A DNA stretch of 64,000 bases from Octopus sinensis (lineage: Eukaryota). Positions within the stretch are counted from its first letter, which is position 1; the number at the start of each line of letters is the position of its first letter. Of this stretch, positions 4,225 through 64,000 are shown piece after piece. The position numbers and the translations under genes are program-made. The notes beneath the pieces are model-generated. The model was not told the origin of the DNA. It ran no database searches and saw only the letters and a list, made by a program, of their open reading frames with translations. The DNA is taken from positions 310,001-374,000 of the forward strand of contig NW_021835988.1 of assembly GCF_006345805.1 (NCBI RefSeq), given 5' to 3'.

Positions 4225-5529
4225 CAGTAAAGTCTCTCGAATCCGCCGACTCTCGAATCCGCCATACCCTCGAATCCGCCAATTATAATTAATAAATTCT
4301 CTTATCCGCCATTTTTCCTAGAAAAAATTCTCAAATCCGCCAAATTCTCGAATCCGCCATATTTTTTATAATGAATCCGCCATGTGTCCTAATTTTAAAT
4401 AATTTTTTTAATTAAATTTACTGATATATAATCAATTTATTAACACGTTACATCTGTCTTTTTTGTTATATTAATGAAACGTAACTGTACAAGACTAAAA
4501 AAAATCAAAAAATTGAGATTTTGAAGTTTATTCAAACAAATAATGAATTATCTTCACTAAAATTTCTGAGATTTTTTCGAAAAAATACAACTTGCCTGTT
4601 TCTAATCAATATACAACTTGCCTGTTTCTAAGAATTTTTAATCAATTTCTATTAAAATGAAAAATGGAATTGCGAAAACAAGATAGAAAAAATTTTGCTG
4701 TTGTAGATCAATCTCCTGCACATAAGGTGAATTTCATGAAATTTACATTAGGTATTGATTGAATTAAAACAAATTGAGATGTTATTTCTACCACCTAATA
4801 CAACATCTTTTATACAGCCCATAGATCAGGGCATAATTAAATCGTATAAATGTAAATTCAATTCTCTAAAATTTTCCAATATAATTCAAAAAATTGAAGC
4901 TGGACAAACCCCTATGTTGCACACAAACAACTAAGCATAAAAGATTCAATATTATTTACATATTATGCTTGGAACAAAATAAAAAGTTCCTTAATTTTAA
5001 ATTGTTCCATTCATGCAAAATGGACTCAAAACAATGAAAATATTAATTATGAAAATCCCTTAATTGAAAATTATGAGAATATTCTGGAAAAAATGGATAT
5101 TATTGATCCGTTAGAAGAAAGTCTTTATATTGAGATTGAATATAATGAAAGTGAAGAACTTGAATTAAATAATTCAGAAAAAATAGAACAAGAAATTAGC
5201 GAAGAACCGTGTGAACAAAGTCAGAAAGTTGTTACCATTAACGAGGCTTTTATCGCTTTAAACAAATTAAAAGAGTTCTACAATCAAGAAGAATTCTTTA
5301 ATATAGAAAATCTTGAGTATATTGAAAACATTGGATCTTCAATGATCCAAACTCTAAAAAGAAACAAGTCGAAACTTACTGATTTTTTTGTTTTTAGTTA
5401 ATTATTTTGGCTTAATAATTTAAATTATTAATGGATTAAAAAATCGATAAGTCTCTCGAATCCGCCAAATTCTCGAATCCGCCAGATTTTGCCGATCCCC
5501 GAAATTGGCGGATTCGAGAGACTTTACTG
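4225..5529 (+). mobile_element. Internally deleted pogo/Tigger element with a 25-nt intron (4727-4751)
   Basis: Perfect 23-bp TIR CAGTAAAGTCTCTCGAATCCGCC with TA at 4223-4224 and 5530-5531; subterminal ctcgaatccgcc repeats; spliced DQSPAHK|VLIELKQIEMLFLPPNTTSFIQP. Confidence 0.9.
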
Positions 5530-5531
5530 TA

Positions 5532-6344
5532 TCTAGAAAACAGACAATATGGAGCCGGCTTAATAAATAAAAAGAACAACTGCTATTTGAATACCGTATT
5601 ACAAACTTTAATTTTCACTCCGCCATTTTATCAAATTTATGATTCGAGTCCAAATATTAATCTATGTTTATATTTTTCATTTAAAATTTGCAGGTCAAAA
5701 AAAATTAAAAAATGAACAATGTCTGGAATGCTCGATGAAATTACACATCGACAAGACAAAGTTAAATTGCTCCTTTTACCCAGATATAATTCTGCAATGT
5801 TTATTAAGTAACTTATTTTGTTTTAATTAATTACAGATCTCTCCAACACGATGAAAGACGATGAACAACAAGACCCGCATGAATGTTTAATATTCATTCT
5901 GGAAAAACTGAATAACAATATTAATTTTGAATATAATAATATGTATGTTAATAATAATTGTTATAGTTCTAATTCTCGGGAGACAAATATCATTTCCAAA
6001 ATTTTTGAAGGTATTCTTCAAAGTCAAGGTTGCTATTTTTATATTATTTCTTAGTTTTTTGTGCAAGTTGTGGACATTCTTCCAAACAATTTGGCCGTTT
6101 TTTGGATCTTTCTGTTTCAATAAAAGTATCATAAGAATTTAAGTTTTTATAGTATGCTTCGTCGCTCCTAAAGTCAATGTCTGCATATTTTGAAGCTGAA
6201 CATTTTAATGGAAGTAATAAATACTTCTGTGATAGGTTTTTATATTTAGATAACTTTATTCAATAGCTGTAATAATTATGTGAAGGGTACAAAGCTTTTA
6301 AGTATTAATAAGCTTCCGAAAATTTTGACTTTTCAAATCAAGAG
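5532..6344 (+). pseudogene. USP36/USP42-like ubiquitin-specific protease, disrupted at both ends
   Basis: Cys box GAGLINKKNNCYLNTVLQTLIFTPPF; QQDPHE motif; CASC...FLDLSV; YFCDSC...KLPKILTFQIKR. GT-AG introns 5648-5693, 5808-5836, 6029-6054, 6126-6152 and 6236-6266 join these in frame. No His box follows. Confidence 0.85.
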
Positions 6345-6489
6345 GTAAATAAAGACTACTTTTAAAAAAGACAACTTTTAAAAAGGTAAATAAAGACAAG
6401 AGGTAAATAAAGACTACGCTGGGGGATGCAAAGTTCGGCGTTAGTTAGTTGATTTCTTAATTATTGTTCGGTCAATAGTTATTGATTGT

Positions 6490-6820
6490 AAAAATAAACA
6501 ATAAAACACTGAAAAAAAGATCCAAATAAACAAAAAATATTAGAAAGAAATAAATTTACTATAAAAAACCATATGAATAGAGATTAATTAATTGATGAAA
6601 TGAATATAAATTCACTTGCAAAATAAACTTTATTCAGGATATTTTACCAGTAGTCAATTTAATTAATCTTCAAACAAATAAAAAACAAAAATATCATAAA
6701 AATAAGACATTAATACCAAGAAAGAGCGAAATAAAAATTAAAAACAAAAACCCACAACAAATTAAAAGAATATTACGTGTTAAACGTTAAATCGATAAAT
6801 TTATAACATTTAAAAAATAT
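6490..6820. repeat. Dispersed AT-rich repeat, copy 2
   Basis: ttcacttgcaaaataaactttattcaggatattttaccagtagtc core. Confidence 0.85.
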
Positions 6821-6825
6821 AATAA

Positions 6826-7546
6826 ATAGAATAGAATAGAATAGTGTTTATTGAGCGAAAAGAAAAAGAAAAACAAGGAAGAAATCATCGGCGGGGAGAT
6901 AAAAACAAGGCACCGAAGTGTCTCTTTCCATGCGTATCCCCAATACTAGTCATGTTTGACGACAATTCTCCAAGACCATCCGGATCGTGGGCACAGAGGA
7001 TTCTTGTGAGTCTTTTAACCTTCCGTCAAGTTGTACTCCGTAAGCCAATTTCATAGCGAAACGTCTTGTCTTTTCCAACTGTTCGATCAGGTAGTCACTC
7101 TCCTCCGTACCGTACCAGCCCTCGTAGCCATATGTGAGGACTGGCTGCACACACGTTTTGTATACGTAGATGTACGTTTCCGGATCCAGATGGAACCTGG
7201 TTAAGCTTTTGAGGATCCTCACACTCCTCTTTCTCTGATTTGCTATATGCTCTACGTACGAGCCACGACAGTTAATGGTTGCTCCCAGGTAAGAAAGATT
7301 TTTTCTTTTCGAGAGATCCATCACATAGCTACTCATCGCATATGCACAAGACTCCGCATAGCGACTCCCTCTCCGCAACCATGAAATGGTGCTCTTCTCC
7401 GGTGCTAGGGTCAAACCCTTCTCTATAGTCCACATCTTTAGCGTTGCAATGTATGATTTCAGTCGTCTCCAAGACTGCGATATCCTTTTTGAGGTATCCA
7501 TGACCAGGATATCGTCAATATAATAAATACCATTTAATATTGTCAT
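6826..7546 (-). mobile_element. L2/CR1-group LINE 3' end with (CTATT)n tail
   Basis: RT C-terminus (IYYIDD, YLGATI, YKTCVQPVLTYG) in ORF 6950-7546; ends aataaacactattctattctatt; near-identical copy at 51385-51985. Confidence 0.8.
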
Positions 7547-10192: not shown

Positions 10193-10216
10193 ACACCAAC
10201 TTCAAATTGGCAATAC

Positions 10217-11200
10217 GATGTCCTCGACTTACATGATGAGGTCCTTAAAACCTTCCCCCAAAAAAAATTAAAAAAAATTTTTCTGCGTTTTGGTCAAAAT
10301 GAACAACTACGATGTCCTCGACTTACATGATGAAGTCCTTAAAACCTTCCCCCCCAAAAAAATTAAAAAAAAAATTTTCTGCATTTTGGTTAAAATGAAC
10401 AACTACAATGTCCTCGACTTACATGATGAAGTCCTTAAAACCTTCCCCCCCAAAAAAATTAAAAAAAAAATTTTCTGCATTTTGGTTAAAATGAACCACT
10501 ACAATGTCCTCGACTTACATGATGAAGTCCTTAAAACCTTCCCCCCCCAAAAAAATTAAAAAAAAATTTTCTGCATTTTGGTTAAAATGAACAACTACAA
10601 TGTCCTCGACTTACATGATGAAGTCCTTAAAACCTTCCCCCCCAAAAAAATTAAAAAAAAATTTTCTGCATTTTGGTTAAAATGAACAACTACAATGTCC
10701 TCGACTTACATGATGAAGTCCTTAAAACCTTCCCCCCCAAAAAAATTAAAAAAAAATTTTCTGCATTTTGGTTAAAATGAACAACTACGATGTCCTCGAC
10801 TTACATGATGAAGTCCTTAAAACCTTCCCCCCCAAAAAAATTAAAAAAAAATTTTCTGCATTTTGGTTAAAATGAACAACTACAATGTCCTCGACTTACA
10901 TGATGAAGTCCTTAAAACCTTCCCCCCAAAAAAATTAAAAAAAAATTTTCTGCATTTTGGTTAAAATGAACAACTACAATGTCCTCGACTTACATGATGA
11001 AGTCCTTAAAACCTTCCCCCCCAAAAAAAATTAAAAAAATTTTCTGCATTTTGGTTAAAATGAACAACTACAATGTCCTCGACTTACATGATGAAGTCCT
11101 TAAAACCTTTCCCCCAAAAAATCAAAAAATTATTTTCTGCATTTTGATTAAAATGAACAACGCGAATGTCCTCGACATTCATGATGAGGTCCATTAAAAC
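10217..11200 (+). repeat. Tandem array of ~95-bp units, about 11 copies
   Basis: Unit aatgtcctcgacttacatgatgaagtccttaaaaccttccccccc(a)n...ggttaaaatgaacaactac, starting at about 10217, 10311, 10407 and so on to 11165. Confidence 0.95.
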
Positions 11201-11414
11201 CTTCAAGGCAAAAATCTCACGTATTAAGAATATCCTTGATGAAAACGACAGCGAGAATATTAACAATGATGAACTCCCAATTATTCGCGATAAAGAAATT
11301 CAATTCATCCTATGTTTTTCTCTTTAAAATTAAATGCATATATCATTATCGACCATGAATCAAAATTAAAGCTATTATCATATTTGACTTTGACAGAATG
11401 TGCAATCACAGATT

Positions 11415-11618
11415 GCACGACTTTGAATAGAGTGTGCAATTAACAGATTTTGAAAAACTACTTTGATAGTTGAAACCACATTAGCACAATCATTAACACA
11501 ATTTACCACCAATTGACGCACGACCTTGAATAGAGTGTGCAATTAACAGATTTTGAAATACACTTTGATAGTTGAAACCACATTAGCACAATTATTAACA
11601 CAATTTACCACCAATTGA
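11415..11618 (+). repeat. Tandem duplication of a 103-bp unit
   Basis: gcacgac...aattgac starts at 11415 and 11518. Confidence 0.9.
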
Positions 11619-14600
11619 CAGCGCAATCAGAAGAATTTGCGTAAAAATATTAACTATTTACTTGAGTTTTTCGTAAAGATAGAATTTATTTTCGGTATGC
11701 CTCTTTTCCTAAACTTTTTTATTATTCAAAAATAATTTTTTAAATAGATAACCGAAGGAGGAAAAACGAAGCTGAAGAAAAAACGGTCAGCTTAATAAGG
11801 TAATTAATTAAATCTTTTTTGTGTGTCGCTTTCTTGCCTGCCGCATTTCCGCCTGCCGCATCTCCCCCTGCCCCATTTCCGCCAGTAAAAAATAAAAAAA
11901 GAAAAAAAAGGAAATTACAAAGGAAAAATGAAAAAATTAAATATAAAAAAAATAAACCACAAAAAATGAAAAAAAAAGTTTGCAATGACAATAAACAAGG
12001 CCCAGGGACAGTCATTAAAGGTAGTTGGGTTATTTTTAGAGAGTGAGTGTTTTTCACATGGACAGCTGTATGTGGGATGTTCGAGGGTAGGCAGAAGAGA
12101 AAATTTATTCATATATGCCAAGGAAGGACGGACGACAAACATCGTTTATCAACAGGCGATAGAATAGGGTTACATTAAACCAGGTAGTTTTATACATCTA
12201 CATAAACTTATAGTTGTTTGATGAAACAGGCCCTCCGCAGGAGCTAGGTCGCGGTGAGCGAAGCGAGCTGCCGAGCTAGTTATTATATAAAACTACAGAA
12301 GGATAGTGTTTTTGGACAACAGATGAGAGCTTTTTGACTTTAAAATTTAGGACCTTCCATGGGTTCACATCTTCAGATTTAGCCTCAATCTTATAGTAGC
12401 AATTTGTATCAGGATTAAAAAAGTTTTACGGTTTTTTAAATAGAGTACTTCAATCAATGTCAAAATATGTGTCGGAAACTTTTCTGGTAGTGTTATACAG
12501 CAGTGCTCTGTACAAATGAAGAGGTTGTACGCCATCAAATAATTAGTAACCAACTCAGACATACTATGGACCAGACATAAATATTCCACCCCTGTCAATA
12601 AAATGTGAATTTATTTAATAACGTGCATTAAATTTTATTAGTTTTATTAATAAATTAGATATTTAAAAAAGGGACTTTCCCACGTTTACATTCTTCACAC
12701 ACTGAAGAATAATTTTGTTATACTCCTCATAAAATCGTGTATATCGACTTGATGAAAAATCAAGAGGATTGAAATCCCTCTGACTCCTTTCCGAAATTGG
12801 CCGTCCTGTCTCATCAGAATAGAACCTCACGCCCAAATCAAGCGAGTTTCTATTTATCCGTTCATGAATTGACATGAATAGTGGAATTTACACAATATAA
12901 TCCAAAAAAGAAATCTAAACTGTTTTAACCTTCTACCTCATATCGTTTGTTTGGAGGCATAACTTTGAGCAAATACTTCTGTTCAGACACCGTCAACCCC
13001 CCGCGAGCAATTCTATTCTCAAAAAGGACGCCGTGATTTAATTATGGTTGTACAATTCCGTCGTATATCAGTAGAAAAGCGAATAGTACAAATTCATTTT
13101 ACGCTCAATGTCGTACAGTCGGCACAACTAGATAAAATCTCGGCAGTAAGCGCTAGTTTGTGAATTTATGACTTCCTCATTCCATTTGTATCACTCGTTC
13201 GACCAAGGCCGCCAGGACTGTGAATTTCCTGAAACAGATTTCGCTCGAGTCCAATTTTTATAACCTGCCCATTTTGGATAGCAGACAACCTTCATGGCGT
13301 ATTTTTTTGTTCCAACTCGAGATTGACGAAAAGATTTTTTTATGACAAACATGGCAGTCTACACTCAACACAACCTCGGGCATTAATTCCCGTCAATCAC
13401 TGATTTCTTTGAAAAATTTTATGAAAGAAATCCTTTCGCGATTCGTTCGATCTTTGTCAAGTCTACCAGCTTGTAATGAGTCGTATTGTCATGTCTTCTG
13501 TGGATAACACCAAAGTGACCTCTCTCGAACGAGAAGATACGTTCTTACAAGTCTTCAGAGACACTTCTGACCAGGCAGTTGTCCTCGACTTCCGGAAATT
13601 CAACGTGATCGTTGCATTTTGTTCACTGAAAATCAAATTGAGTATTACTGATATCCAAAAAATTTGTTGGAGTTGAGCAATTCGTTTATTGGCCTGTCTT
13701 CGATGCTCTCGTTCTGAAATGAATATTTAATAAAAGACCGAAAAAGTTACATCCATATTGAAATACATTTATTTGAATTAATTTTCACAATTAATTTTTT
13801 TGAAACGTTTATTATCTCAATATTGTTATCCAAGGCCAACAACTCACGGAGGACCTTCTTCTGCTCTCCAATATTCACATAATTGTCGTACTCTTTTGCT
13901 GTCATGATCATCTCCTTTTTAACCAACTAAACATCTTTTGGGAATTCTACACTCTTCCAGATTTGGTCCTCACGGTTATTGTCACCAGTTTTTTCATCGA
14001 CTTCTTGTGAATATTTTTTTTAGCTTTCTTTCAGTTTATGTGATGCGTTTTTGCTTTCAATTTAAGATTTTTCATCTGAGGCAAGTAGATTTCGTTTTTT
14101 CATAATGTTCTCGATTGTTAATTTTCCTTCTTCTAGTGCCTTTGATTCCTCTTTGGTCAATGACAACTTTTTTTTGATAAGTCGACCACTTTTTTCCGAG
14201 TAGTTGCTGTGTTGAGGACCTTTTGATATAAAAATTGCTGTTTTATGACTTTCCTTTGATTTTACTGTTTTTTCTTGTTTTCAGTCGATTAACTTGCGTT
14301 TTGCTCAAAAATGTTTTTTCCTCATAATCTCCTCTAACGTGACCTTCCCTTCATCCAGTGCTTTAGCCTCTTGTTCAGTCAAAAAAATCTTTTTCTGAAC
14401 GATCTTTTCACTTTTTGTGCGGACTGTGGCAGTGACCGAATGCTGCATTTTATCCTAAACGTATTTAATCTGGATTGAATTTCTTTTAAAAAGGTTTAGC
14501 CTTCCAGGCTTTGAGTTTCGCATCTTTGCTAATTTCACCACGTTTTTTTAAAAACATCCTCGAGATTTAGAGTCTCACTTTAGATAGCTTCGTACTCCTC

Positions 14601-20689: not shown

Positions 20690-21085
20690 AGTAAAGAAAA
20701 ATTAATAATTTCAGATGACAAAAAACTAAAAAGATCAAAATAAGCAATAAAATAGTGGAAAAAATAATTTACTTTAAAAAAATGCATTGAATGAAGATTA
20801 ATTAATCGATAAAATAAATACAAATTCACTTGCAAAATAAACTTCATCCATGATATTTTACCAGTAGTCAATTTAATTAATCTTCAAACAAATAAAAAAA
20901 TAGAATAAAAATAAAACATTTATAAACAAAAGAATGAAATAAGAATTAACAACCAAAACCACAAAACAAGAAAAGAAAATAACGTGCTTAACATGTTATA
21001 ATTTATTGTAATTAATTCGATAAATTTAAAACTTTAAAAAATTAAATAAATAACATTTAATATTGTGAGTCTGTTTGAATTCAGC
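20690..21085. repeat. Dispersed AT-rich repeat, copy 3
   Basis: Same core as copies 1 and 2. Confidence 0.85.
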
Positions 21086-21144: not shown

Positions 21145-22703
21145 CAGTATAACCTCCATTTGGGGCATCAATTTTGAAAAATTGCCCCAAAAATAGAGGT
21201 TTCCCCAAAAATGGAGGTCTGAAATTTTCTTTATTTTTATAAAAATTTTAATAGTTTTAGCATATTTTTCATTAATTTATAAATAAATAAAGTATTTTTA
21301 AGAACATTTAAACATGTTTTCCACTAATTTTATTGATAATTAGAGTATTTTTCAAGTAGAAAAAAATTTTTATTCTATTACACGAAAATAATCTGTTATT
21401 TTGTTTCCTGTTGCAGATTTCTTCATATGTATGCCCAATATTTTTCTAAAATTGTAATAGTCTTTTAACGCATCGGGAAACAAACGGTGAATATTCTCTT
21501 CAAGGTTATTCATTGCTGTTATCGTGTCCAAGTGTGAACAGTTGCATTCAGTTTGGTCATATATTGACTCATCATTATTTTCTTCTTCATTTTCAGCAAT
21601 TACGTCTGCAATTATCGTGTCCAAATTTTCTTTCTCACTGTTAACTAAAAAATTTGAACTAGGAATCTGTTGCCGACAGTTATTAATTGTTTCCCAACAA
21701 TTCGTTATTGTTTCAGGATTTAAATTTTGCCATGTTTTTCCAACAATTATTATGACATGACGAAGATTTATTTTTTTTAAATTAACAATTTGTAACTCAA
21801 CGTCCTCAAAATAAAGAGTAAAATCCAATAAAGCGTTAAGATAATTGGACTTGAAAGATTTAATAATACCCATGTCTAACGGTTGAATTAATGAGGTTGT
21901 ATTTTTTGGGAGAAAAAACAATTCAATGTTGGAAAGATGAATATATTTGTGACAGCTTGGGTTATCAAGTAACAAAACAATTTTTCTCTTTTGCGTAATC
22001 ATTTGTTCATTTGTAATGGTGAGCCATGTAATAAATATTTCTGATGTCATCCAACTGTTTTTAGATGATGAATATGAAACTCCATGTTCTTCAGGGTTAA
22101 AGTTTTTCATACAACGTGGGGATTTATATTTTCCTACTAACAATGGCTTGACCGGACACAGGAATAAATTCTTCCCTTGTCTTGGTGAAAGCCTCAAAAA
22201 CAATTTTATCCAATTTTTGGGATAAAGTATGAGGAGAGCGTTGAATATTTCTGGGAAAATCTGTTTGAACAGCCCCAGTATTAAAAAAATTGAGATAATT
22301 TTTTTTAATACGTGACACAGCGCCTAAAAACTTACATTAATAAAAAACCTTTACTAATTTTGTACTTATCTACAATATCTCGTTCAGTAAGATGTTTATT
22401 TTCACTTAATTCCTTGACAATTTTGATCTTTAACTCAAGACTAAGCTTACGAGCCATAACAACAAGAATACAAAAATTACACGAGGCTTCCAAATGAAAT
22501 TTTATATAATTAATTTTATTTTTAATAGCAAATATGTATATAAATTAAAAATCCTGTGCCCCACTTAGAGGTTCCGGTAATTTCTAAATTTGGAAATTAC
22601 CGCATAAAAATTATATCCTTTTCAAACTACCCCAAAAATAGAGGTTTCCCCAAAAATAGAGGTTCCCCAAGCCAGAGGTCTGCCCCAAATGGAGGTTATA
22701 CTG
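21145..22703 (-). mobile_element. pogo/Tigger element, internally deleted transposase with a 25-nt intron (22324-22348)
   Basis: TIR CAGTATAACCTCCATTTGGGGCA at both ends with TA flanks; ATG at 22457; spliced HTH YKISK|GAVSRIKK; DDE region LLLDNPSCH and IQPLDMGII. Confidence 0.9.
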
Positions 22704-28192: not shown

Positions 28193-28264
28193 CTCCCCGA
28201 CCGGGAATCGAACCCGGGCCACCGCGATGACAACGCGGCATACTAACCATTATACTATCGGGGA
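28193..28264 (-). tRNA. trnD: tRNA-Asp (GTC)
   Basis: Acceptor TCCCCGA/TCGGGGA, anticodon arm CCGCG-TTGTCAT-CGCGG, T arm CCGGG-TTCGATT-CCCGG, downstream T run. Confidence 0.97.
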
Positions 28265-33294: not shown

Positions 33295-35335
33295 TTAAAT
33301 AAAACGTGCCTCAAATGCGTTTTTTCCAATCTAAGACAATAAAGGAAACAAAGAACCTTCCCATTTTTAAACTTTTTTAAAAGATGGGCATCACTCTCAA
33401 TCTCCTCCAAATCCTCATGGTTCAATTCCATAAGTTTATAGTCATTACAAACTCTCTTTTTCTTGGCCTTCATCCTCTCCCTCTACCACTACACAACCTC
33501 AAATATAACTTTCTTAGCATATTTGGCATTCAGTCTTTTCTTCGACTCCTTCTTGGCAAAATTGTCCTCTGCCATCTTCTTCCTTCTCTCTTCTCGGACA
33601 CAGTCACTACAATCAACACAACCAGATTACCGATATGGCACTAAATCTACATCAACAGAGGATGGAACAAATAGGGTTGTGTCATTTTTACGGATTTCCA
33701 CCATTTTGGGAATTCTTAGCAACCCAAAGGACTCAGCTAAGAAGGAAACGGGGAGTTCTGAATAAATATATCACAACTTACTTGATAGGTTGAAAATGAC
33801 TTTAAGGGGATGTTTTAAGTAGGCTTTGATATATGATACAAATGCCAACACCCCTGATTCCATAAACTCTCTTTCAGTCTCAGATAAACTTCTTAATATA
33901 GCGGATATAGACACGTCTTCAAAATCTTCACAAAACTCTTCCAAGAATACCTACATTAAATGTACCACCAGAATAATTATAAAAACCTCCAAAATGTATT
34001 TTAATTAATTAATATTTAATTAATAATAAAACTAAACCTTTTGATTTAACTTTAAAAAATCTACATAAACATCCTCATGTTGATTAAGCAGTAGCAAGCT
34101 TCTACCTGTACGTCCCATGCGAGCAGTACGTCCACAACGATGTACAAATGAACTAATATGTACTAAAATATACAACCTCGCCATTTTAGGGGGATCAAAT
34201 TGAATTACCCACTCCACTTGGGGCACATCTATTCCACGTGATACTATATCAGTACACAACAAGACAGCACTAAAATAATTTAAATCCCACCAAATTTATT
34301 ATAATTTAAAATAATTAATTACCATTTTGATTCTCTAAATTTAGAATAAATAATATCTCTTTTGCCTTTTTGTTTTCTGTGAAGACAGAAAAGAGAAAGT
34401 TCTGGAAATTTTCTATGTGTTTATTATAAATAAAATACCTTTTAATTACGCTATAATAATAAGACGTGGAAGCACAAGTGCAGAAAAAAATAATAATTTT
34501 TTCTTCGTTATATTTAGTAGATATTTCTTCTTCTGACTTTAACGAGATTAGCCGAGGATTTCTCATCCCAAACTGCATCAGACTTGTAATCTCTGCATTC
34601 AAAGTTGCAGAAAAGATCCCAGTCCTCCTCTGCTTAGGCAAATATCGCAGAATAGTTTCAATACTAAGAAATATATCACCAAACTTACTTTCTACGGTAA
34701 CCATCAGCTAACAGCCTATCAGCCTCATCTATCACCAGAACTTCCTACAATGGGTAACCAATAAGCAATACAAGACGTTCTAAGGAGGATGCCAAGTCAA
34801 AGCCCTCATGTCTCTGCTTTAGAAAGGCCTCAGCTCTCCCAGGAGTACACACAGTGACATTCCCACTAATATATACCCCTATAAAACACCCATTTGTGAC
34901 AAAATTCTTGACTGAGTCTGCCACTGACTGTCCTCCCACAAGCTGACAGTGTGATAAGTGAGGGAAATAGGCAAGGAAGTGAAGAAGTACCTCATAGACT
35001 TGGACTGAGAGTTCACGTGTGGGCACAATTATCAAGGCAATGATCTTTAAATTAGTTTTTTGAGGGTTACGTCATATTTGTTGAAATTTTGGGTTATTTT
35101 TGATAGGCGTTGTACTATGGGGATAATGTAGGCCAAGGTTTTCCCACTGCCTGTTATAGCTTCTACAGCCACATCATAATTTTGGAGAAATATTGGAATT
35201 GTTTTTAACTATAGTTATATAATTGTTAATATATACTTGAATTGGTGTTAGTTTAGTGAATTTTAATTCTTTTATTGCTTCTTTTACTTTTTCGTTGAGA
35301 TTAATTTTATATTTTTGTAATTGATTTTCAATCAT
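33295..35335 (-). CDS. DDX55: ATP-dependent RNA helicase DDX55/SPB4 with 13 GT-AG introns
   Basis: Spliced product has the Q motif (LTPIQ), [49 protein letters not shown] and [12 protein letters not shown]. Introns: 35209-35236, 35045-35070, 34866-34889, 34745-34771, 34664-34688, 34413-34438, 34270-34322, 34153-34176, 33951-34037, 33758-33781, 33607-33630, 33483-33509, 33331-33356. Confidence 0.93.
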
Positions 35336-46466: not shown

Positions 46467-46922
46467 TTAGATAATTTAAAATAGAATTGACATCTTAGTA
46501 AATATATGTTTTCTAGTGAGGTATAATAATAAAAATAAGACGATTAGTCAAAGAGATTGATGACAACAAAAACTCATATTACGCCAATCATTGCGAGAGG
46601 CCTGCGTGATAGATACATAGCCGATCTCATTAACTTATGGAGATATTTGGAATTAAAAGATTGAAATTCCTGATTATTAGCATACGGTCAAACCTCTATT
46701 GGTCGCCATCTCTATTGCTCGCCACATTTTTTCCAAAAAATTGAGAATTTCTAAAGAAACCTCTATTGCTCGCCAAATTCTAAATCTCGCAACTATTTTT
46801 AATTATTAAAAAATTTTTTTTGGTTAAACTGACTTTAAACATTGTATTATCTTATTTTCTGTGTATCTTATTGTATTGTCTTATTTTCTGTGTATCCTAT
46901 TGTATTCTATTCTAATCTATTC

Positions 46923-48137: not shown

Positions 48138-48650
48138 AAGTTTAATTAATTAAAAATAATAGAAGATCAAAATATTAGAAAAAATCAGAATAGTAGAAAA
48201 GATCAGAATATTATAAAAAAATCAGAATAAAGAATAAAATGTTAGAAAAAATAAATTTAAAAAAGTCTGTATAAATGCATATTAATTAATTGATAAAATG
48301 AATACAAATTCACTCGCAAAATATACTTTATACAAGATATTTTACCAGTAATCAATTTAATTAATAGTCAAACAAATAAAAAAACGAAAATATTGTAAAA
48401 ATTAAACATAAAAGCAAGAAAGAATAAAATAAGAATTAACTACATACACGCACAACAAAAGAAAATAATATAACGTGCGTAGTAATTTATCGTAGTTAAT
48501 TCATAAGATAAAAACATTTAAAAATAAAATAAATAACATTTAATGTCTAAATCTGTTTTAATTCTGCTCGGAACGTAAATTCAAAACACTATAAGATATG
48601 TGGCGTGCCTCACCTACGACGTGGTGGCATTCCACAATAAATGTGAAAAA
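48138..48650. repeat. Dispersed AT-rich repeat, copy 6
   Basis: High similarity to copy 5, with the same two ends. Confidence 0.9.
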
Positions 48651-51985: not shown

Positions 51986-52902
51986 CGTATGAGAAATTCC
52001 CGAATCCGCCAATTTCTCGAATCCGCCGCATTTTTAGAAATATATATTTTTTATTTTCTTAATTATTATTATTTTTTTTTAATTCAAAAACACTTTTACT
52101 CGAGACATTATCATTTAATTGTGTGGTTGTTCCTGTTAATTGTAATGAAACGTAATTGTACCAGATTGAAAAATTCCGAAAAACAACAAATTATTAAATT
52201 TATCGATCAAAATCCAGGGATTTCGCTTACAAGAGTGTCCGCTATCTTTTCCGAAAGATTCAGACGCGTTATTTCAAGACGATCCTTAAACGACCTTAGG
52301 AGCAGAAGGAATGTATCTGCCTTGCTTTTTTCAGAATTATCTCGGAATCCATATTTAAAGTTCAATGAAATTGATGAAGATACTATGTCATGGATTGAAA
52401 TGATGGAAACCAGAGGAGCAATTCTTAATGATTCGATTATTCTTACAAAGGCTGAAGACTTTGCGAAGAAACGTCTAATAACTGAGTTTAAAGCCAGTCG
52501 TGGATGGCTTAAAAAATTTAAAAGAAGACATGGGTTAAAATTGAAGAAACTTTATGGAGAATCTTCTACAGAGAATTTCTCAAATTCTGAAGTTAATGAT
52601 TTTCTCATTAATATAAGAGCAAAAATAAAATTATATGGTCGCGAAAATGTCTATAATGCAGATGAGACAAGATTATTTTATAAAGCTCTTCCATGTAAAA
52701 GCATTTGCAAGATCAAGAGATATGGGCATAAATTATTGAAGGATCGAATATCGATAATGTTCTGTTCAAATATGACTGGTACCGATAAACTAACACCATT
52801 CATAATTGGAAAATTCAAAAATCCTAGATGCTTTAAAAATTTTAGCTATCGAAGTTTTGTGACCTATCATAATTCAAAAAAAGCATGGATGGATTCTAAG
52901 TT

Positions 52903-53486
52903 TTTCCTTATTAAACTGGGAGATTTGGCAAGCAGAAGAAGAAATGATCATCGGGAACGGACATGGCTTTTTCAACGCATATCAATAGCCATCTTGCGTG
53001 GGAATTGCCATTCCATCTTATCCTCTGCTGCTAATTAAATACTAAATAACAGATTCAAATATGATAATTTCGTTTTTAAAAAAAATATATGTAAAAAAAA
53101 ATTTTAATAAAAAATTATAAATTTCTTTTAAGATGCCAATCTGTAGGAAAGACAGATTTTTGTTACGACGATTTATCAAATTGAAAAGCAAAAAGATATT
53201 AATAATATATTAATTAATTTCTTCAAAAAACAATTTTTTTGGGTTTTAGTGGTGCATGAATAGGCTTGAATGGCCACTTAATAGTCCAAGAAAGTTTGCC
53301 CTCAAATGCGAAAAAAGTTTTTTGATATACGAGTATTCCCCCGAGTACTGCCCCCTTATCAACGGAACATGTATAGTCCTCCCAATTAGTCGACAGTCGG
53401 TGACGAATTTGCCCATAAATATTCCCGTCTTGTACGTACATTCAAATACCAGGGAGGAACATTGGTAACACGTGACTATTTACAAA
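52903..53486 (+). mobile_element. Composite insert: CRE 3' end plus ~380 bp of unknown sequence, flanked by a 10-bp direct repeat
   Basis: ATTCTAAGTT at 52893-52902 and 53487-53496; removing the insert restores KAWMDSKLFNTF. Confidence 0.85.
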
Positions 53487-53929
53487 ATTCTAAGTTATTC
53501 AATACATTTTTGTTCGAATGGGATATCAGGTTGGCTGAAGAAAAAAACAAAATACTACTCGTAATTGACCAATGTCCATCTCACAAGATTTTTACAAATT
53601 TACAGCAAATTGAAATAATGTTTTTGCCGGCAAATGCTACGTGTTTATTACAGCCGATGGACCAAGGAGTCATTAAGACATTCAAGACGCTATTCAATAA
53701 ATTCAAATTTCTTGAAATTATTGAAAAAAATGAACTCGGAAAATCGTCATCTGAGGAATGTAAAGAAATAAACCTTAAGGATGCTTTTTTTTTAATTAGT
53801 CTATAAAAATATTCAAATTTGTCTCTCGAATCCGCCAAACTCTCGAATCCGCCGTAATTTCCCAGGTCCCAAATTTGGCGGATTCGAGAGGTTTTACTGT
53901 ACCAAAATTTTACTCTTTGTGGTTTCATT

Positions 53930-54363
53930 AATAAAATGAAATTAACTGCCCATAGGTATCGCGTGGCCCATGTGACAAAATAATCGCATATGTGGGAGAA
54001 GCATGAAGTCGAGTAACAACAACAACAATTGTCAATTGTTGGATGAAAATAAACGAACAGAGAACATGTTTTCCTGAAACTAATTCAAAAAAAGAATCTG
54101 AATTAATTGATAAGCATGTTTTAGCTTTAATGGATCTTGAAATAAACGGAATTGAGGATAATGATACTTTGTATAATGGAAATGATGAAATTGAAGGGTC
54201 CGACTTAAAAGATTCAATGAGAATAATCAATGATCTTGAAACTTCCTTATTCAACACTTGCCCTGAAGGACTCAAAGAATACTATGAATTCAAGATAAAA
54301 ATGTCGAAGATTCTAAGAAATAAATATAATACTGGATTCAAAATAACTGATTATTTTTCATAG
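53930..54363 (+). mobile_element. pogo transposase C-terminal fragment
   Basis: Ends KITDYFS, like KITDYFRVIE in the 21145 element. Confidence 0.6.
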
Positions 54364-54471
54364 AATAAATTAATTCCTCTTTTTTAATACGAAAAAACAT
54401 ATTTTATTATTAAAAATACAAATATTTGCGTTTGAAATATAAAAATTATATATACCTCTATCTTAGGGGCA

Positions 54472-55088
54472 ATGGGAGAAATCAATTAAAATGTTTCAGT
54501 CATTATTAATAATGTTTATTTAAAAATACATGATTCTTCAAACCAATAATTAATTATAGAAATTAAAGGATCAAGGAACCAATAAACATAGAAATAATGA
54601 AAAAAACCATAAATAACAAGTAAAAACTATTCATCGCAGAAAAATATAAAATAAATATTTTTTAGATATAGAAAATGTATAAAAATGGGAGAAATCAATT
54701 AAAATGCTTCAGTCATTATTAATAATGTTTATAGAATGATTAAAAATACATGATTCTTCAAACCAATAATTAATTATAAAATTAAAGGATCAAGGAACCA
54801 ATAAACATAGAAATAATGAAAAAAACCATAAATAACAAGTAAAAACTATTCATCGCAGAAAAATATAAAATAAATATTTTTTAGATATAGAAAATGTATA
54901 AAAATGGGAGAAATCAATTAAAATGCTTCAGTCATTATTAATAATGTTTATAGAATGATTAAAAATACATGATTCTTCAAACCAATAATTAATTATAAAA
55001 TTAAAGGATCAAGGAACCAATAAACATAGAAATAATGAAAAAAACCATAAATAACAAGTAAAAACAATTCATCACAGAAAAATATAAA
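54472..55088. repeat. Tandem repeat of ~219 bp, about 2.9 copies
   Basis: atgggagaaatcaattaaaatg at 54472, 54685 and 54904. Confidence 0.95.
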
Positions 55089-56962: not shown

Positions 56963-57640
56963 ATGCGTATTGTGAAGCTCAGCAAAGAAATTCTTGAAAA
57001 AATCAAAAAAATCAGAGAAAACCAAGAAGAAAACACAATAGACGACAGTCCCAACAGAAAACAACGATTAAGACTAAAGCAGCTTGCGAAAAACATATGC
57101 TTTGAAAATGGAAATGTATTCTTTATTAAGAATTCAACCAAATTGTGATTTTTCGCAGAGGATGACATGACATTGAGTTGAAGCGTAAATGTATTGAGGT
57201 ATTGGATTAATTAACATAAGTCGAAATCTGCGGTAGAAATACCTAACCTATTCCAAAATATTTTTTATTACATCGGACCACCAATCATCCTCCAAACAGA
57301 CAATGAGAAAGAATTCTGTAATTCGTTAATTGACGAAGTCTGTGAAAAATATTCGATCAAGCATGTGCGTGGTAGGGCACGAGCGCCCTGGATACAAGGG
57401 CAAGTAGAGAGGTTGCCTGATGGTTTTAATTTTTTAAGGTTCAACCAAAGCATAAAACGTTGGATATCTTCACCAAGTGCCTCTCGTGGATATTTTGGGC
57501 GATATTGTACCATAATCAAAGACATTGTTTATGATTACAATAACACAATACACTCCACAACCGGAAAAGACCTGTTCTACTTGTTTATGGGTGCTCAAAA
57601 TCCAATAACGGAGTCGAAAATTGAACAATTATTATCGGGA
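56963..57640 (+). mobile_element. Ginger-like integrase fragments with a 27-nt intron (57412-57438)
   Basis: LQTDNEKEF, RGRARAPWIQGQVER|FNQSIK, YNNTIHSTT. Confidence 0.75.
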
Positions 57641-57689
57641 GATGTCGACAGTGAAATTGTAAATTTCACGTTGAATTTTAAAAAATTTA

Positions 57690-58395
57690 ATCTTTTTCAT
57701 GTTAATTGCGTCACCCATATTTTGCATAATTGTTCAATGGAGCTCAGAAAATCTTATCCAGAAGTTGATGATGTGATAGCTAGCGTGCAAGCTTCTGTCA
57801 GGAAGAACCACAAGCGAAAATTGTTGTTTTACGAAATTGGAATTCCTCCGAAAGTTGTGTTGACGAGATGGGGGCACCTGGTTAAAGGCTGCATCTTTTT
57901 ATTCAAGAAATTTAATCTCAGTGATTAACATTTTTGATTTGATTGAGGACGAAGGAATACTAATGACTGCCACCAAAAATGCATTGAAAATTGAAAAACT
58001 AGTAAAAAGCTTATGTGCAATTTCGCATAACTATTCACATATTCCAGGTTTTTCATATAGTAATTAATCTCATAGAGAAAATATTACAACTTGAAAGTAA
58101 CGAATGTACAATAGAATTTGCATATTCGACGTTAAGTACACTTGACTTCGGAAAGGATGAAGCAGGGATCAAAAAATATTTAGAGAAGAGAATTTTAGAG
58201 AGCGATATGACTAAAATTATTAATATGGATAATAAAAATAATTCTCCAGAAGATTATTCGTTACTTCAAAACTGTCAACCATCCTCGGCATCTATCGAAC
58301 GATGCTTTTCGCAATTTAGGAGTTTTATGAGGTCAAACAGAAACTTTGCTACACAAAATTTGGAAAATTATGTTATGTCCATTTTTAATAAATAG
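57690..58395 (+). mobile_element. hAT (CGGBP-like) transposase C-terminal part with a 28-nt intron (58048-58075)
   Basis: HVNCVTHILHN, LTRWG, spliced YSHIP|EKILQLES, SASIERCFS. Confidence 0.75.
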
Positions 58396-60870: not shown

Positions 60871-61009
60871 TCTATAAGAAGGTCTATATATTTATAAACG
60901 AGATTAAATATTATGAATTTAGCTATGGTAAGGAATATGAATGTAATCATATTGGATTTATATTCATAATTGCCCAAGAATAATCAAATATTGGTAATAA
61001 TTTAATCAC

Positions 61010-61620
61010 CAGCACCGCCGCGCTTGCCTTCTGTCGGCAGCATCCACGGCTAGTGGAGCTTGGCTTTGTGCATTCCCGAACGCCCCATCTGGCACTCTGC
61101 TTGACGATGAAACGGTAAGGATCGGAGTCTCTCTGCGACTCGGACTAAGGCAATGTGTCCCGCACACGTGCCGCTGTGGCTGCACTGTTGACCCTTTCGG
61201 TCTGCACCCTTTATCGTGCAGGAGGAGTGCCGGACGTTTCCCGAGGCACTCTGCTATGAATGACATCATTCGGAGGGGCCTCGACTCGGCGGGATTTCCT
61301 TCGGTTCTCGAACCACCGGGCCTTGATCGCGGCGACGGGAAACGTCCTGACGGGATGACCTTTTTTCCCTTTGAAGGCGGAAAAGGCCTCGTCTGGGACG
61401 CAACCTGCTGCGACACCTTTTCTGCTTCTCACTTAACTTCGTGTGCTCTGGAGGCCAAATCTGCAGCTAAGAAGGCTGAATATTTAAAGCTTTTAAAATA
61501 TTCTGCCCTCTCGGAGAAGTTTTCCGTTGTGCCGATCGCGGCGGAGACGTCGGGTGCTCTCGGTCCAAAAACAGAAAAGTTTCTTCGCAAGCTCGGAGCC
61601 AAAATCTCAATGCGCAGGTA
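61010..61620 (+). mobile_element. CRE endonuclease region
   Basis: [25 protein letters not shown]. Confidence 0.85.
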
Positions 61621-61669
61621 GACTTGTTGAATGATTAATTTTTGAATTTTAAAAATCATTGTTTTATTT

Positions 61670-62266
61670 GATTTATAGTTTACTAGTACTCACAAATGCC
61701 GGTGTGGGGCCATCGTCGATTGTTATGGACACCATGCTCTCTCTTGTCGAAGAAGTGCAGGACGATTTCCAAGACACAAGGCGATCAACGAAATTGTCAA
61801 GCGAGCCCTGGAGTCTGCAGGATACCCGGCCGTACTTGAACCGGTCGGGCTTGACCGAGGAGATGGGAAACGTCCTGATGGGATCACAATTTTCCCATTT
61901 GAAGAGGGGAAACCCCTAGTCTAGGACGCAACCTGTGTGGACACTCTCTGCCCGTCCAACATTGCCGGGAGCGCAGTGGACAGACTGTATGCCGCAAAAA
62001 AAACGATGAGGGCGAAGGAAAGAAATTATGAAGCGCTGCGAGATCGATTCGTGTTCTGTCCGATTGTGGTCGAGACAACTGGAGGAATAAGTGGGAAATC
62101 GCTTCGCTTCCTAAAGAAGCTTGGACGCTTAGCCACATTAAAAAGCCACGACACACGTGAGACCCGGTGGCTTCTCCAGTTGATCTCCGTTGCTATCGTG
62201 AGAGGCAACGCAACGTCAATTATGTTGGCGGGGTTCACTTCGGACCGGTTAAATTTTCTTAATTAA
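61670..62266 (+). mobile_element. Second tandem CRE endonuclease region
   Basis: CRCG...HALSC, DGKRPDG, QLISVAIVRGN. Confidence 0.85.
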
Positions 62267-62400
62267 TTCCATAAATTAACTTCTGTATCTGTAATAAAAA
62301 TGTTTATAGTAAAATTAATACTATTCTCGATTTTCATAGTATTTAATTAGCAGCAGAGGATAAGATGGAATGGCAATTTCTTGTGAGATACGTTATTATA

Positions 62401-64000
62401 TGTGACCGGTTGAATACGAGCCCAGGTTGAATACGAGCCGTTAAAAAAATCGTCAATATTTTTTTAATGAAAAAATTAATCAATTAATTAATTTATACCT
62501 TTATAATGATTTGTAATTTTAACAATTCTAAATTTTTCACAAATTTTTGTTTTCTTAACGGTTTACGTCAGATAGAATAGTAATAGATTTTTCCTCACGT
62601 TAGTTTTTTTTTGTTATGAAGGTTGTCCGTTTCAATCTGCTACAAAAGCAAGAAATTATAACCTATCTGAAATATCAAATTATACCATCCAATTTGCTAA
62701 AGGAGAAGCGAAATTTTATAAGAACTACATCCTTATTCAGATTAATAGACTCCTCGCCGGATCAATTATTTTTTATCAAAACAAGTGGAATTCTTTTGCA
62801 TGTGTTCGTTGTGGAAGAGGATGAACAGCAGAGGATATTTATTGAAAATGTTCACCTCAAAAATGGACATCCTGGTCGTGATAGACTTCTTTCTCTTTTA
62901 AAGAATTTAGTCTATGGATCTTGCAGAGATGAAGTTATGCTTGTTCTCAGGTCTTGTCCACAATGTCTTGCAAGACGACTTATGAACACTCGACCAAGTA
63001 TAACACCTATCAGAGCATATACAGTCAGAGAAAGGTAGTAGTTATCTACTCTAATATCAGATATATTTTTGATTTAGTTGATCTACGGCATTATTCAAAT
63101 GCCAATGACAATTTTTGCTGGCTTTTGGTTGGGTTGGATTCTTTTTCTAAATTTTGTTGGACAAGACCTCTAAAGACTAAATCGGCCATGGAGGTGTCAA
63201 GTGCAATAAAAAGTATAATTCTGATGTTTGGAAAACCAACCATTTTGCACACAGACAATGGCAAGGAATTCGTAAACGAAAAAATGTTCGATTTATGCTC
63301 AACATATCGTATAAAACACGTCAGAGGGCGTCCTAGGTGTACATGGGTGCAGGGACAAGTAGAGCGGCTGAATCAGACATTGAAGTTCATGATTTCTTCT
63401 ACGTGCTTTTCAAAGAATTTGAATTTCAGATGGATCGATATCATCGAAGAAATTACAAGTTCGTATAATTCTGTCCAGCATTCGACCACTTTGCACGCTC
63501 CATTCGAATTGATGTTTGGAGCTTCTGCCGATGACACCGTTAATAATCACTACTCAGAAAACGAAATGAATGAAATATTCCACCAAATTTATTCGGGGAA
63601 TAAAGAAACACAAAGTGAAGCAACTGAATATCTTGCATGGTTTTGGTCATCGAATGAAACCACGAGAACGAAAGCAATTTCGAATTCAGACCATGCCGAA
63701 AGAAAAATGTTAGGAAAAAGAACCTGGAAGAATGATATTTCCATTTTTAACATCGGCGATCGAGTTGTCAGGAGGGTGTATCTTGACAATAATAAAAAAA
63801 CACGGAAAAGTGCCTTAAATGAGCACATTGATACATTCACATATTATGTTAGAGGAGTATCTGCCACAGGAATTGTTGGTACTGTGAGCAGAAGATGGTA
63901 CTGTGATTCAAGAAAATAGCAGAGACTTAGCGAGGCTAGAATAGCTTAATCGAAATTTAAAGATTTTCTTACAAATTAATTTAAATAAGATTATTTAAGT
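62401..64000 (+). mobile_element. Ginger-like (KRBA2/SCAND3-type integrase) element, right end beyond the window
   Basis: Putative TGT-starting terminus with a repeated ggttgaatacgagcc at 62401-62440; integrase gene downstream; no RT or LTR visible. Confidence 0.7.
62616..63944 (+). CDS. Integrase (H2C2 zinc domain plus rve core) with a 26-nt intron (63035-63060) and one late frameshift
   Basis: HLKNGHPGRD...CPQC; spliced VRER|YIFDLVD; LDSFSK; HTDNGKEF; QGQVERLNQ. The shifted frame ends SRDLARLE*, matching LAKLE* at 18838. Confidence 0.85.

What the first reader, a model, noticed from the sequence alone, without database searches (positions are those of the whole stretch)
4727..63060. Tiny spliceosomal introns in five DNA transposases from three superfamilies, all at AG|GT sites
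Seen: 25-28 nt GT-AG inserts at 4727-4751 (pogo), 22324-22348 (pogo, minus), 57412-57438 and 63035-63060 (Ginger-like) and 58048-58075 (hAT). Removing each restores a homologous reading frame. All five follow an exonic AG, versus 4 of 13 DDX55 introns, and two have AGGT at both junctions. Related copies that cover the same site lack the intron in three cases. Inference: this genome gains host-sized introns in mobile genes, either by insertion at proto-splice sites with an AG(GT) duplication or by splicing-rescued repair inserts. It could also tie transposition to host splicing control.
Basis: partly seen in the sequence, partly recalled or inferred. Interest (0 to 1): 0.88.

Follow-up and report, generated by a model that had tools for sequence, protein, structure and literature searches.

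The report
Mini-introns inside DNA transposon genes
Five 25-28-base introns really do interrupt transposase genes in this tiny-intron (probably dicyemid) genome, but they look like ordinary inherited transposon introns of the host's usual size, and recent intron gain is not shown.

Summary
Removing each one makes the protein colinear with homologues. They match the host's own introns in size (mostly 24-31 nt in DDX55 and a USP gene) and in A+T content (0.76 vs 0.75). They are real spliceosomal-type introns, not chance indels.

The "this genome is gaining introns" reading is only partly supported. The pogo2 intron is present in a 97-99.5% identical copy. It also sits at the same codon and phase in a pogo family only 69% identical in DNA. 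The Ginger5 intron is present, and alignable, in a 66%-identical family. A Ginger lineage only 35% identical in protein has an intron at the identical codon and phase, there after CG rather than AG. These two introns are therefore old and inherited.

Two further candidate transposon introns follow AT or GC, which weakens the AG|GT rule (5/5 vs 6/18 host, one-sided p≈0.014). I found no introner-like repeats and no flank duplication. Four of the five copies are dead fragments. Introns in Ginger1 and CACTA transposases are already documented.

Side finding: several "Octopus sinensis" contigs appear to come from this same tiny-intron organism.

The parts
4225..5529 (+). pogo1: internally deleted pogo/Tigger-type element, TIR CAGTAAAGTCTCTCGAATCCGCC, TA duplications at 4223-4224 and 5530-5531
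   Evidence: ends read directly; Pfam DDE_1; shared terminal motifs with pogo3
4727..4751 (+). intron 1, 25 nt, AAG|GT...AG|GT, in the DDE domain between DQSPAHK and VLIELKQ; retention gives a stop after 12 codons
4916..4935 (+). candidate second pogo1 intron, 20 nt, TAT|GT...AG, which bridges the frameshift; unproven because the protein region is variable
21145..22703 (-). pogo2: pogo/Tigger-type element with 23-nt TIR CAGTATAACCTCCATTTGGGGCA and TA duplications (22705-22704, 21144-21143); 356-nt internal deletion at 22150/22149 relative to the full-length copy L004:2478-4394
22324..22348 (-). intron 2, 25 nt, phase 1, in the N-terminal helix-turn-helix (KYKISK|GAVSRIKK); also at L004:2839-2863 and at the same site in L005 (29 and 30 nt)
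57203..57680 (+). Ginger3: 5'- and 3'-truncated fragment of a Ginger/KRBA2-like integrase gene, abutting the hAT fragment
57412..57438 (+). intron 3, 27 nt, in frame and without a stop, GAG|GT...AG|GT, splitting the conserved QGQVER|FNQ motif; absent from every other Ginger copy examined
57689..58392 (+). hAT4: 5'-truncated fragment of a DUF659-type hAT-like transposase gene with a 1-nt frameshift near 57873
58048..58075 (+). intron 4, 28 nt, CAG|GT...AG|AG; removal gives a 163:163-residue colinear match to about 415 homologues
62401..64000 (+). Ginger5 element: 5' terminus TGTGACCGGTTG at 62401, coding sequence 62616-63919 (425 aa, intact after splicing); 3' end lies beyond the window
63035..63060 (+). 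intron 5, 26 nt, phase 2 in the Arg codon of VRER|YIFDL; homologous 25-nt intron at L002:2849-2873; 24-nt intron at the same codon and phase at L004:1291-1314
33331..35335 (-). host gene DDX55/Spb4 with 13 introns (24-28 nt, plus one of 53 and one of 87); 4 of 13 follow AG
5533..6345 (+). host ubiquitin-specific protease gene (partial) with 5 introns of 46, 29, 26, 27 and 31 nt; 2 of 5 follow AG
52286..54357 (+). pogo3: a third pogo family that lacks both pogo introns
46548..46724 (+). integrase fragment that covers the Ginger5 intron site without an intron
1370..1503 (+). N-terminal fragment of a DUF659 hAT-like gene, 89% identical in DNA to L007:11697-11824; it ends inside the counterpart of a candidate 23-nt intron (TGC|GTATAAAT...)

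Best explanation
The five inserts are ordinary U2-type spliceosomal introns that belong to the transposase genes of cut-and-paste DNA transposons: two pogo/Tigger families, two Ginger-like integrase families and a DUF659 hAT-like family. The host genome processes all its introns at about 24-31 nt and is most likely a dicyemid such as Dicyema japonicum.

Because these elements move as DNA, the intron travels with every copy. Full-length transposase can be made only after the host spliceosome removes it. Retention gives a premature stop in four of the five cases.

At least two of the introns (pogo2 and Ginger5) are old features of their element families. Whether each intron first arose inside this lineage, or is older and was lost from intron-less relatives, is unresolved.

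Shown: anatomy, exact colinearity with homologues, host-like size and composition, and conservation of position and phase among diverged copies. Inferred: that the introns are actually spliced, and the identity of the organism.
For: - GT-AG ends and lengths of 25-28 nt in all five.
- Gapless homologue alignments after removal.
- Host introns in DDX55 and the USP gene have the same size class and A+T content, 0.75 against 0.76.
- Ginger5 becomes an intact 425-aa H2C2 + rve protein only after splicing.
- pogo1 and pogo2 are bona fide elements with TIRs and TA duplications.
- L002 shows about 73-nt TIRs with a TGTCA terminus around a Ginger gene, and the window copy has the matching terminus at 62401.
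- The pogo2 intron is present in a 97-99.5% identical full-length copy (L004) and at the same codon and phase in a 69%-identical family (L005).
- The Ginger5 intron is present and alignable in L002 (66% nt identity). An intron sits at the identical codon and phase in the distant L004 integrase.
- Literature: introns under 30 nt occur in animals only in D. japonicum and myxobolids (PMC13644364). D. japonicum has 36.7% GC and 49% repeats (PMC6736024), against 34.9% GC in the window. Ginger1 transposase genes carry 1-4 introns (PMC2836005).
Against: - There is no RNA evidence; no spliced product was found in the protein collection.
- Four of the five copies are decayed, so current splicing has no functional consequence for them.
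- Intron 3 is in frame without a stop and could equally be read as a 9-residue insertion.
- The 5/5 exonic AG against 6/18 in host introns (one-sided Fisher p≈0.014) is not explained by 'ordinary intron' alone.
- Many homologues lack these introns, which fits gain as well as it fits loss.
Confidence: 0.75

Rival explanations
1. Recent, ongoing intron gain in mobile genes. Short GT...AG segments are inserted at AG|GT proto-splice sites, with AGGT duplication or as fillers of double-strand-break repair, and splicing rescues the gene.
For: - All five follow an exonic AG, against 6/18 host introns.
- Two have AGGT at both junctions.
- Introns 1 and 3 were found in no other copy.
- Homologues on DNA contigs lack the introns: Dictyocoela genome models, ENA assemblies, and the intact paralogue P0001.
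- The host 5' splice-site logo is reported to be reduced to 'GTa' with no exonic AG (PMC13644364).
Against: - Introns 2 and 5 are conserved in position and phase across families 66-69% identical in DNA or only 35% identical in protein, and intron 5 is alignable with its L002 counterpart.
- The homologous intron in L004 follows CG.
- At the pogo2 site the downstream GT or GC is just a synonymous Gly codon difference.
- Candidate extra transposon introns follow AT or GC. With them included, the AG excess is no longer significant (5/7 vs 7/19, p=0.13).
- There is no similarity between the introns, to their flanks, or elsewhere in the window.
Confidence: 0.15
2. Ancient transposon introns, older than the elements' residence in this genome. 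The site-A intron, for example, could be one of the conserved Ginger1/GIN1 positions. These introns were shrunk to host size and lost by reverse-transcriptase-mediated intron loss in the intron-less relatives.
For: - Identical codon and phase in Ginger lineages only 35% identical in protein.
- Three intron positions are conserved between Hydra Ginger1 elements and vertebrate GIN1/GIN2 (PMC2836005).
- Intron loss was inferred to dominate in CACTA transposases (PMC4158355).
- The genome is rich in LINE reverse transcriptase (PMC6736024; many RT fragments in the window).
- The homologue sample is biased towards uninterrupted ORFs, and some Logan contigs may be cDNA.
Against: - In a neighbour-joining tree, the smallest clade containing both site-A intron carriers holds 26 tips, and all but the three site-A carriers (23) read through site A without an intron. 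That implies many independent losses against two gains.
- I could not map site A or site B onto the published conserved positions.
Confidence: 0.3
3. The inserts are not introns at all. They are random small insertions in decaying transposon pseudogenes that happen to start with GT and end with AG.
For: - Four of the five copies are defective.
- ORF-bridging GT...AG segments are abundant by chance (487).
Against: - Exact colinearity with homologues, GT-AG ends and host-modal length in 5 of 5 cases.
- Ginger5 and L002-G are open across the junction only after removal.
- The same site is interrupted in independent diverged copies.
Confidence: 0.03

Closest known systems
Introns in Ginger1 transposase genes and their GIN1/GIN2 derivatives (Bao, Kapitonov and Jurka 2010, PMC2836005; 'multiexon DNA transposon', PMC12863088)
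   Same: Gypsy-integrase-like H2C2 + rve transposase in a TIR-bounded element with TGTNR termini. The coding sequence is interrupted by canonical GT-AG introns, and intron positions can be conserved between diverged families.
   Different: Here the introns are 24-27 nt instead of normal animal size. The one complete copy seen (L002) has an apparent 5-bp TGGCT duplication rather than the 4-bp CCGG/CCGT one. Correspondence of sites A and B to the published conserved positions could not be tested.
Intron presence/absence variation in CACTA transposases (Buchmann et al. 2014, PMC4158355)
   Same: Transposase genes of one superfamily differ in exon number. Boundaries cluster at conserved positions. 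Both loss and occasional gain are inferred.
   Different: That study covers plants, a different superfamily and normal-size introns, and it is based on a systematic phylogeny of 64 genes. Here there are only a handful of copies.
Ultra-short introns of Dicyema japonicum and myxobolid myxozoans (Lu et al. 2019, PMC6736024; Hadjez et al. 2026, PMC13644364)
   Same: Same size class (median in the 20s of nt), reduced splice-site motifs, A/T-rich. The host genes in the window behave the same way.
   Different: As far as I read them, those papers describe host genes and do not discuss transposase genes. The five transposon introns all have an exonic AG, which the published host logo lacks.
Splicing-dependent transposases: P element third intron, Drosophila pogo, Tc1/Tc3, Ac, Tol2 (from general knowledge, not checked here)
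   Same: The transposase is made only from spliced mRNA. For the P element, tissue-specific splicing controls transposition.
   Different: There is no evidence here for regulated splicing.
Introners: transposons that create introns in host genes (PMC12130899)
   Same: Both link transposons and introns. Short direct repeats at intron ends are a known signature of introner insertion.
   Different: An introner is a repeated element that becomes the intron. Here the introns are unique, unrelated 25-nt sequences inside transposon genes, and no repeated family was found in the window.

Membership tests
U2-type spliceosomal intron | GT at the 5' end and AG at the 3' end | tested here: met
   All five; also the related introns in L002, L004 and L005.
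U2-type spliceosomal intron | Removal yields an mRNA that encodes a protein colinear with homologues | tested here: met
U2-type spliceosomal intron | Length and composition within the host's intron distribution | tested here: met
   25-28 nt against host 24-31 nt (plus 46, 53 and 87); A+T 0.76 against 0.75.
U2-type spliceosomal intron | Actually removed from transcripts | not testable with these tools
   No transcript data were available. No spliced product appeared in the protein searches.
pogo/Tigger (Tc1-mariner superfamily) | DDE_1 catalytic domain with CENP-B-type helix-turn-helix domains | tested here: met
   Pfam DDE_1 for pogo1 (3e-10) and pogo2 (2e-31). HTH_Tnp_Tc5 is on record for the full-length L004 copy. 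The N-terminal HTH scores only weakly.
pogo/Tigger (Tc1-mariner superfamily) | Terminal inverted repeats flanked by a TA target-site duplication | tested here: met
   pogo2 and pogo1 ends read directly.
Ginger1 DNA transposon | H2C2 zinc finger plus rve integrase core, with no reverse transcriptase or LTR | tested here: met
   Pfam rve 2e-14; Integrase_H2C2 5e-5, just below the curated cut-off. The L002 element is only about 2.2 kb between its TIRs.
Ginger1 DNA transposon | TIRs of 40-270 bp with TGTNR termini | tested here: met
   L002 arms 2139-2211 and 4300-4372 with terminus TGTCA; window terminus TGTGA at 62401.
Ginger1 DNA transposon | 4-bp CCGG/CCGT target-site duplication | tested here: inconclusive
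   The single complete copy (L002) shows TGGCT on both sides, an apparent 5-bp duplication. CCGG lies inside the TIR.
hAT superfamily | RNase-H-like catalytic core plus C-terminal hAT dimerisation domain | tested here: inconclusive
   Full-length homologues hit Pfam DUF659, one above the curated cut-off. The window fragment gave no Pfam hit. A C-terminal ...SIERCFSQF... motif is visible by eye.
hAT superfamily | Short TIRs and an 8-bp target-site duplication | not tested
   The window copy is a truncated fragment.
Introner-like element family | Many near-identical intron copies in the genome | tested here: not met
   No second copy of any of the five (5 or fewer mismatches) in the window, and no similarity between them. 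Only 64 kb could be searched.

The most novel reading that the evidence does not exclude
Two Ginger lineages that are only 35% identical in protein, each with intron-less nearest relatives, acquired an intron independently at the very same nucleotide and phase within this one genome. Together with the excess of AG|GT, this would mean the tiny-intron genome creates introns at preferred sites in mobile genes. Transposon families would then be a datable record of de novo intron birth.
Probability: 0.12. Interest if true: 0.75.

Novelty: new member of a known kind. Interest (0 to 1): 0.38.

Why it matters
If only the ordinary reading holds, the value is practical.

- Transposase genes in dicyemid-type genomes cannot be annotated without allowing introns of about 25 nt. 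NCBI models of the related copies are visibly mis-spliced or truncated for this reason.
- Multi-copy transposon families with and without a given mini-intron would be a convenient system for dating intron gain and loss in a genome where a 25-nt insertion is enough to make an intron.
- The same-site intron in two distant Ginger lineages is the one observation that could bear on the open question of how new introns arise.

Tried and rejected
- **Ciliate origin.** The tiny introns first suggested Paramecium, but the standard genetic code fits, GC is 35%, and the transposon content is animal-like.
- **ORF-bridging scan.** A blind scan for GT...AG segments that bridge ORFs gave 487 candidates and is useless without homology.
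- **Duplication and introner tests.** Tandem duplication of flanks, similarity between introns and repeats elsewhere in the window were all negative.
- **Palindrome in intron 1.** The 14-nt perfect palindrome (7-bp stem) is not clearly unusual; host introns reach 5-6 bp.
- **Octopus-parasite horizontal transfer.** The best protein hits are labelled Octopus sinensis. I dropped this idea because those contigs share the window's repeats at 95-99.5% and carry tiny introns themselves, so they are most simply the same organism.
- **Word-based protein search for hAT4.** It found nothing. The exhaustive search was needed.
- **Mapping to conserved Ginger1/GIN1 introns.** The paper's supplement holds only partial protein alignments without exon boundaries.
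- **A eukaryotic multi-exon Ginger relative.** P0030 turned out to be an uninterrupted ORF.
- **Rfam and tRNA scans.** They added only two tRNA genes.

Full report
**What the window is.** The 64-kb window has 34.9% GC and reads in the standard genetic code. It is mostly transposon debris: LINE/RT fragments, three pogo families, Tc1-like, hAT-like and Ginger-like integrase genes, a roughly 350-nt repeat in six copies, and tandem arrays.

Two host genes are recognisable.
- A DEAD-box helicase on the minus strand (35335..~33300). Its spliced product is most similar to yeast Spb4, the DDX55 orthologue (E=5.5e-77).
- Part of a ubiquitin-specific protease gene (5533-6345).

Both are split by very short GT-AG introns. 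DDX55 has thirteen: 28, 26, 24, 27, 25, 26, 53, 24, 87, 24, 24, 27 and 26 nt. I re-drew the twelfth by eye from the sequence as a 27-nt intron; one search had used a 17-nt segment there. The protease gene has five: 46, 29, 26, 27 and 31 nt.

Among animals, introns under 30 nt are reported only for Dicyema japonicum and myxobolid myxozoans (PMC13644364). D. japonicum has 36.7% GC and 49% repeats (PMC6736024), whereas Henneguya has 29% GC and myxozoans have few transposons. I therefore infer a dicyemid origin. This is an inference, not a demonstration.

**The observation.** All five inserts are at the stated coordinates, start with GT, end with AG, and are 25, 25, 27, 28 and 26 nt long. All follow an exonic AG, and the first and third have AGGT at both junctions.

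Removing each insert gives exact colinearity with homologues.
- Ginger5 reads ...AYTVRER|YIFDLVDL... and Ginger3 reads ...QGQVER|FNQSIK..., both gapless against nine relatives.
- hAT4 aligns 163 residues to 163 residues across the junction with about 415 proteins of roughly 457 aa.
- pogo2 reads KYKISK|GAVSRIKK against KYKISKGSVFRIKK in relatives.
- pogo1 gives one continuous match to Pfam DDE_1, with the same H-to-FLP spacing as pogo3.

So is the statement that in-window relatives lack the intron in three cases.

Three qualifications apply. Insert 3 is in frame with no stop. The 'hAT' is a DUF659-type hAT-like family. Four of the five copies are defective.

**Is it more than chance?** GT...AG segments that merely join two open frames are abundant (487 in the window), so frame restoration alone proves nothing.

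The force of the evidence is that an insertion defined independently by homology begins with GT and ends with AG. I estimate this at about 0.003 per case from the base composition. It also has the host's modal intron length and A+T content (0.76 vs 0.75), and this holds in five of five cases. Ginger5 becomes an intact 425-aa H2C2 + rve protein only after removal.

**What the elements are.**
- pogo1 (4225-5529) and pogo2 (21145-22703, minus strand) have terminal inverted repeats and TA duplications.
- pogo2 is an internal-deletion derivative. A full-length copy, L004:2478-4394, is 97-99.5% identical and carries 356 nt more at the 22150/22149 breakpoint.
- Ginger5 starts with TGTGACCGGTTG at 62401. 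A related complete element in L002 has about 73-nt inverted repeats with the same TGTCA-type terminus, as described for Ginger1. Its flanking duplication looks like 5 bp rather than the published 4-bp CCGG.
- Ginger3 and hAT4 are abutting truncated fragments, and hAT4 has a frameshift.

**Related copies elsewhere.** The best protein hits are labelled Octopus sinensis. The contigs behind them come from assembly GCA_006345805.1: L004 (5.2 kb), L002 (247 kb), L005 (500 kb) and L001/L007 (1.29 Mb).

These contigs share the window's repeat families at 95-99.5% nucleotide identity and themselves contain mini-introns. They are most simply sequence from the same tiny-intron organism; D. japonicum lives in the kidney of O. 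sinensis (PMC6736024). I therefore do not invoke host-parasite transfer.

They are useful as extra copies.
- The pogo2 intron is present unchanged in L004 (2839-2863).
- A pogo family only 69% identical in DNA (L005, two tandem copies) has a 29- or 30-nt intron at the same codon and phase...KTTK|G..., with an unrelated sequence.
- The Ginger5 intron has an alignable 25-nt counterpart in L002 (2849-2873; the family is 66% identical in DNA).
- A decayed integrase in L004, only 35% identical in protein to Ginger5, has a 24-nt GT-AG intron at exactly the same Arg codon and phase (1291-1314). There it is preceded by CG.

NCBI's models miss these introns. P0195 uses an 88-nt intron from the same donor, and P0004 starts downstream of the intron.

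**Gain or loss?**

Copies without the introns exist.
- The intact paralogue P0001 (54% identical to Ginger5, a single exon, on L001).
- The window fragment at 46548.
- pogo3, which lacks both pogo introns.
- Dictyocoela genome models.
- Uninterrupted ORFs on ENA or Logan contigs: P0003, P0011, P0016, P0045 and P0196.

In a neighbour-joining tree of the integrase core, Ginger5 and L002-G are sisters (76% bootstrap), followed by P0001. L004-G sits in a different clade next to intron-less P0016. The smallest clade holding both site-A intron carriers has 26 tips, and all but the three site-A carriers (23) read through site A without an intron.

That favours two gains over many losses by parsimony. 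Three considerations weaken this argument.
- An independent hit on the same nucleotide is a priori unlikely.
- The homologue sample is biased towards uninterrupted ORFs, and Logan contigs may be cDNA.
- Ginger1 elements are known to carry ancient conserved introns (PMC2836005), which I could not map onto my alignment.

The origin therefore stays open. What is clear is that introns 2 and 5 are old and stably inherited. Introns 1, 3 and 4 were seen in one copy each, so their age is unknown.

**The AG|GT pattern.** Five of five transposon introns follow AG, against 6 of 18 host introns (one-sided Fisher p=0.014). The published host logo lacks an exonic AG (PMC13644364).

Several things weaken this.
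- The homologous L004 intron follows CG.
- The GT after the pogo2-site intron in L005 is only a synonymous Gly codon variant.
- Two further candidate transposon introns follow AT (window 4916-4935, 20 nt) and GC (L007:11817-11839, 23 nt; its start is also present at window ~1494-1503).
- With the extra cases added, the excess is not significant (5/7 vs 7/19, p=0.13).
- A reader working by eye may have been guided by AGGT.

The introns do not resemble each other or their flanks and do not recur in the window. There is no introner or duplication signature.

**Comparison with what is known.** Introns in DNA-transposon genes are well documented.
- Ginger1 has 1-4 introns, with conserved positions shared with GIN1/GIN2 (PMC2836005, PMC12863088).
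- CACTA transposases show loss and occasional gain (PMC4158355).
- From general knowledge: P element, pogo, Tc1, Ac and Tol2.

Mini-introns in dicyemids are also known (PMC6736024, PMC13644364). What is added here is that the transposons of such a genome carry introns of the host's miniature size, in three superfamilies, with presence/absence differences between families.

**Verdict.** It is best filed as a new member of a known kind. The same-site intron in two distant Ginger lineages and the AG excess keep a small chance of something more interesting alive. No RNA evidence was available.

Noticed in passing
L001/L007, L002, L004, L005 (GCA_006345805.1 contigs VCDQ01000492.1, VCDQ01001336.1, VCDQ01006390.1, VCDQ01002911.1): Contigs and RefSeq-style proteins labelled Octopus sinensis ('KRBA2-like', 'tigger 6-like') share the window's repeats at 95-99.5% nt identity. 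Their transposase genes carry 23-30-nt introns. They probably derive from the dicyemid parasite rather than the octopus. The gene models are mis-spliced or truncated at the mini-introns.
   Followed up: partly
L004:1291-1314 versus window 63035-63060: Two Ginger-like integrase genes only 35% identical in protein have a mini-intron at the identical Arg codon and phase, while each one's nearest relatives lack it. This is either parallel gain or an ancient intron with many losses.
   Followed up: partly
window 4916-4935; window ~1494-1503 and L007:11817-11839: Two further candidate transposon mini-introns: 20 nt in pogo1 and 23 nt in the N-terminal part of a DUF659 hAT-like gene. They are preceded by AT and GC rather than AG. 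The surrounding protein regions are variable, so the boundaries are unproven.
   Followed up: partly
window 10214-11204; 54471-55088; 11415-11619: Tandem arrays: 95 nt x 10.4 copies (95% matches, open in one frame), 219 nt x 2.8 copies, and 102 nt x 2.
   Followed up: no
window 673-1021, 6489-6828, 20715-21077, 37827-38191, 45306-45655, 48194-48544: A roughly 350-nt interspersed repeat in six copies, 74-93% identical. It is SINE- or MITE-like and was not classified.
   Followed up: no
window 6338-6420: The ubiquitin-specific protease gene stops being readable right after a donor site. The 21-nt string CAAGAGGTAAATAAAGACTAC occurs twice about 60 nt apart, and an interspersed repeat follows. The gene may be disrupted here.
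   Followed up: no
window 53803-54007: pogo3 is interrupted by a short element that carries the same CTCTCGAATCCGCC terminal motifs as pogo1 and pogo3, in both orientations. This looks like a nested MITE-like derivative.
   Followed up: no
window 34866-34889, 34153-34176 and other DDX55 introns: Several host introns have a length divisible by three and no in-frame stop (for example the two 24-nt introns at these coordinates). Their retention would not create a premature stop. Transposon intron 3 shares this property.
   Followed up: no
window 28193-28264(-), 38885-38955(-): tRNA-Asp(GTC) and tRNA-Gly(GCC) genes lie among the transposon debris.
   Followed up: no
P0002, P0010, P0018, P0199, P0200, P0202 (Dictyocoela muelleri): For both the Ginger and the pogo families, the closest hits not labelled Octopus sinensis are annotated in a microsporidian genome (about 48-51% identity). 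This could reflect horizontal transfer or host contamination in that assembly.
   Followed up: no
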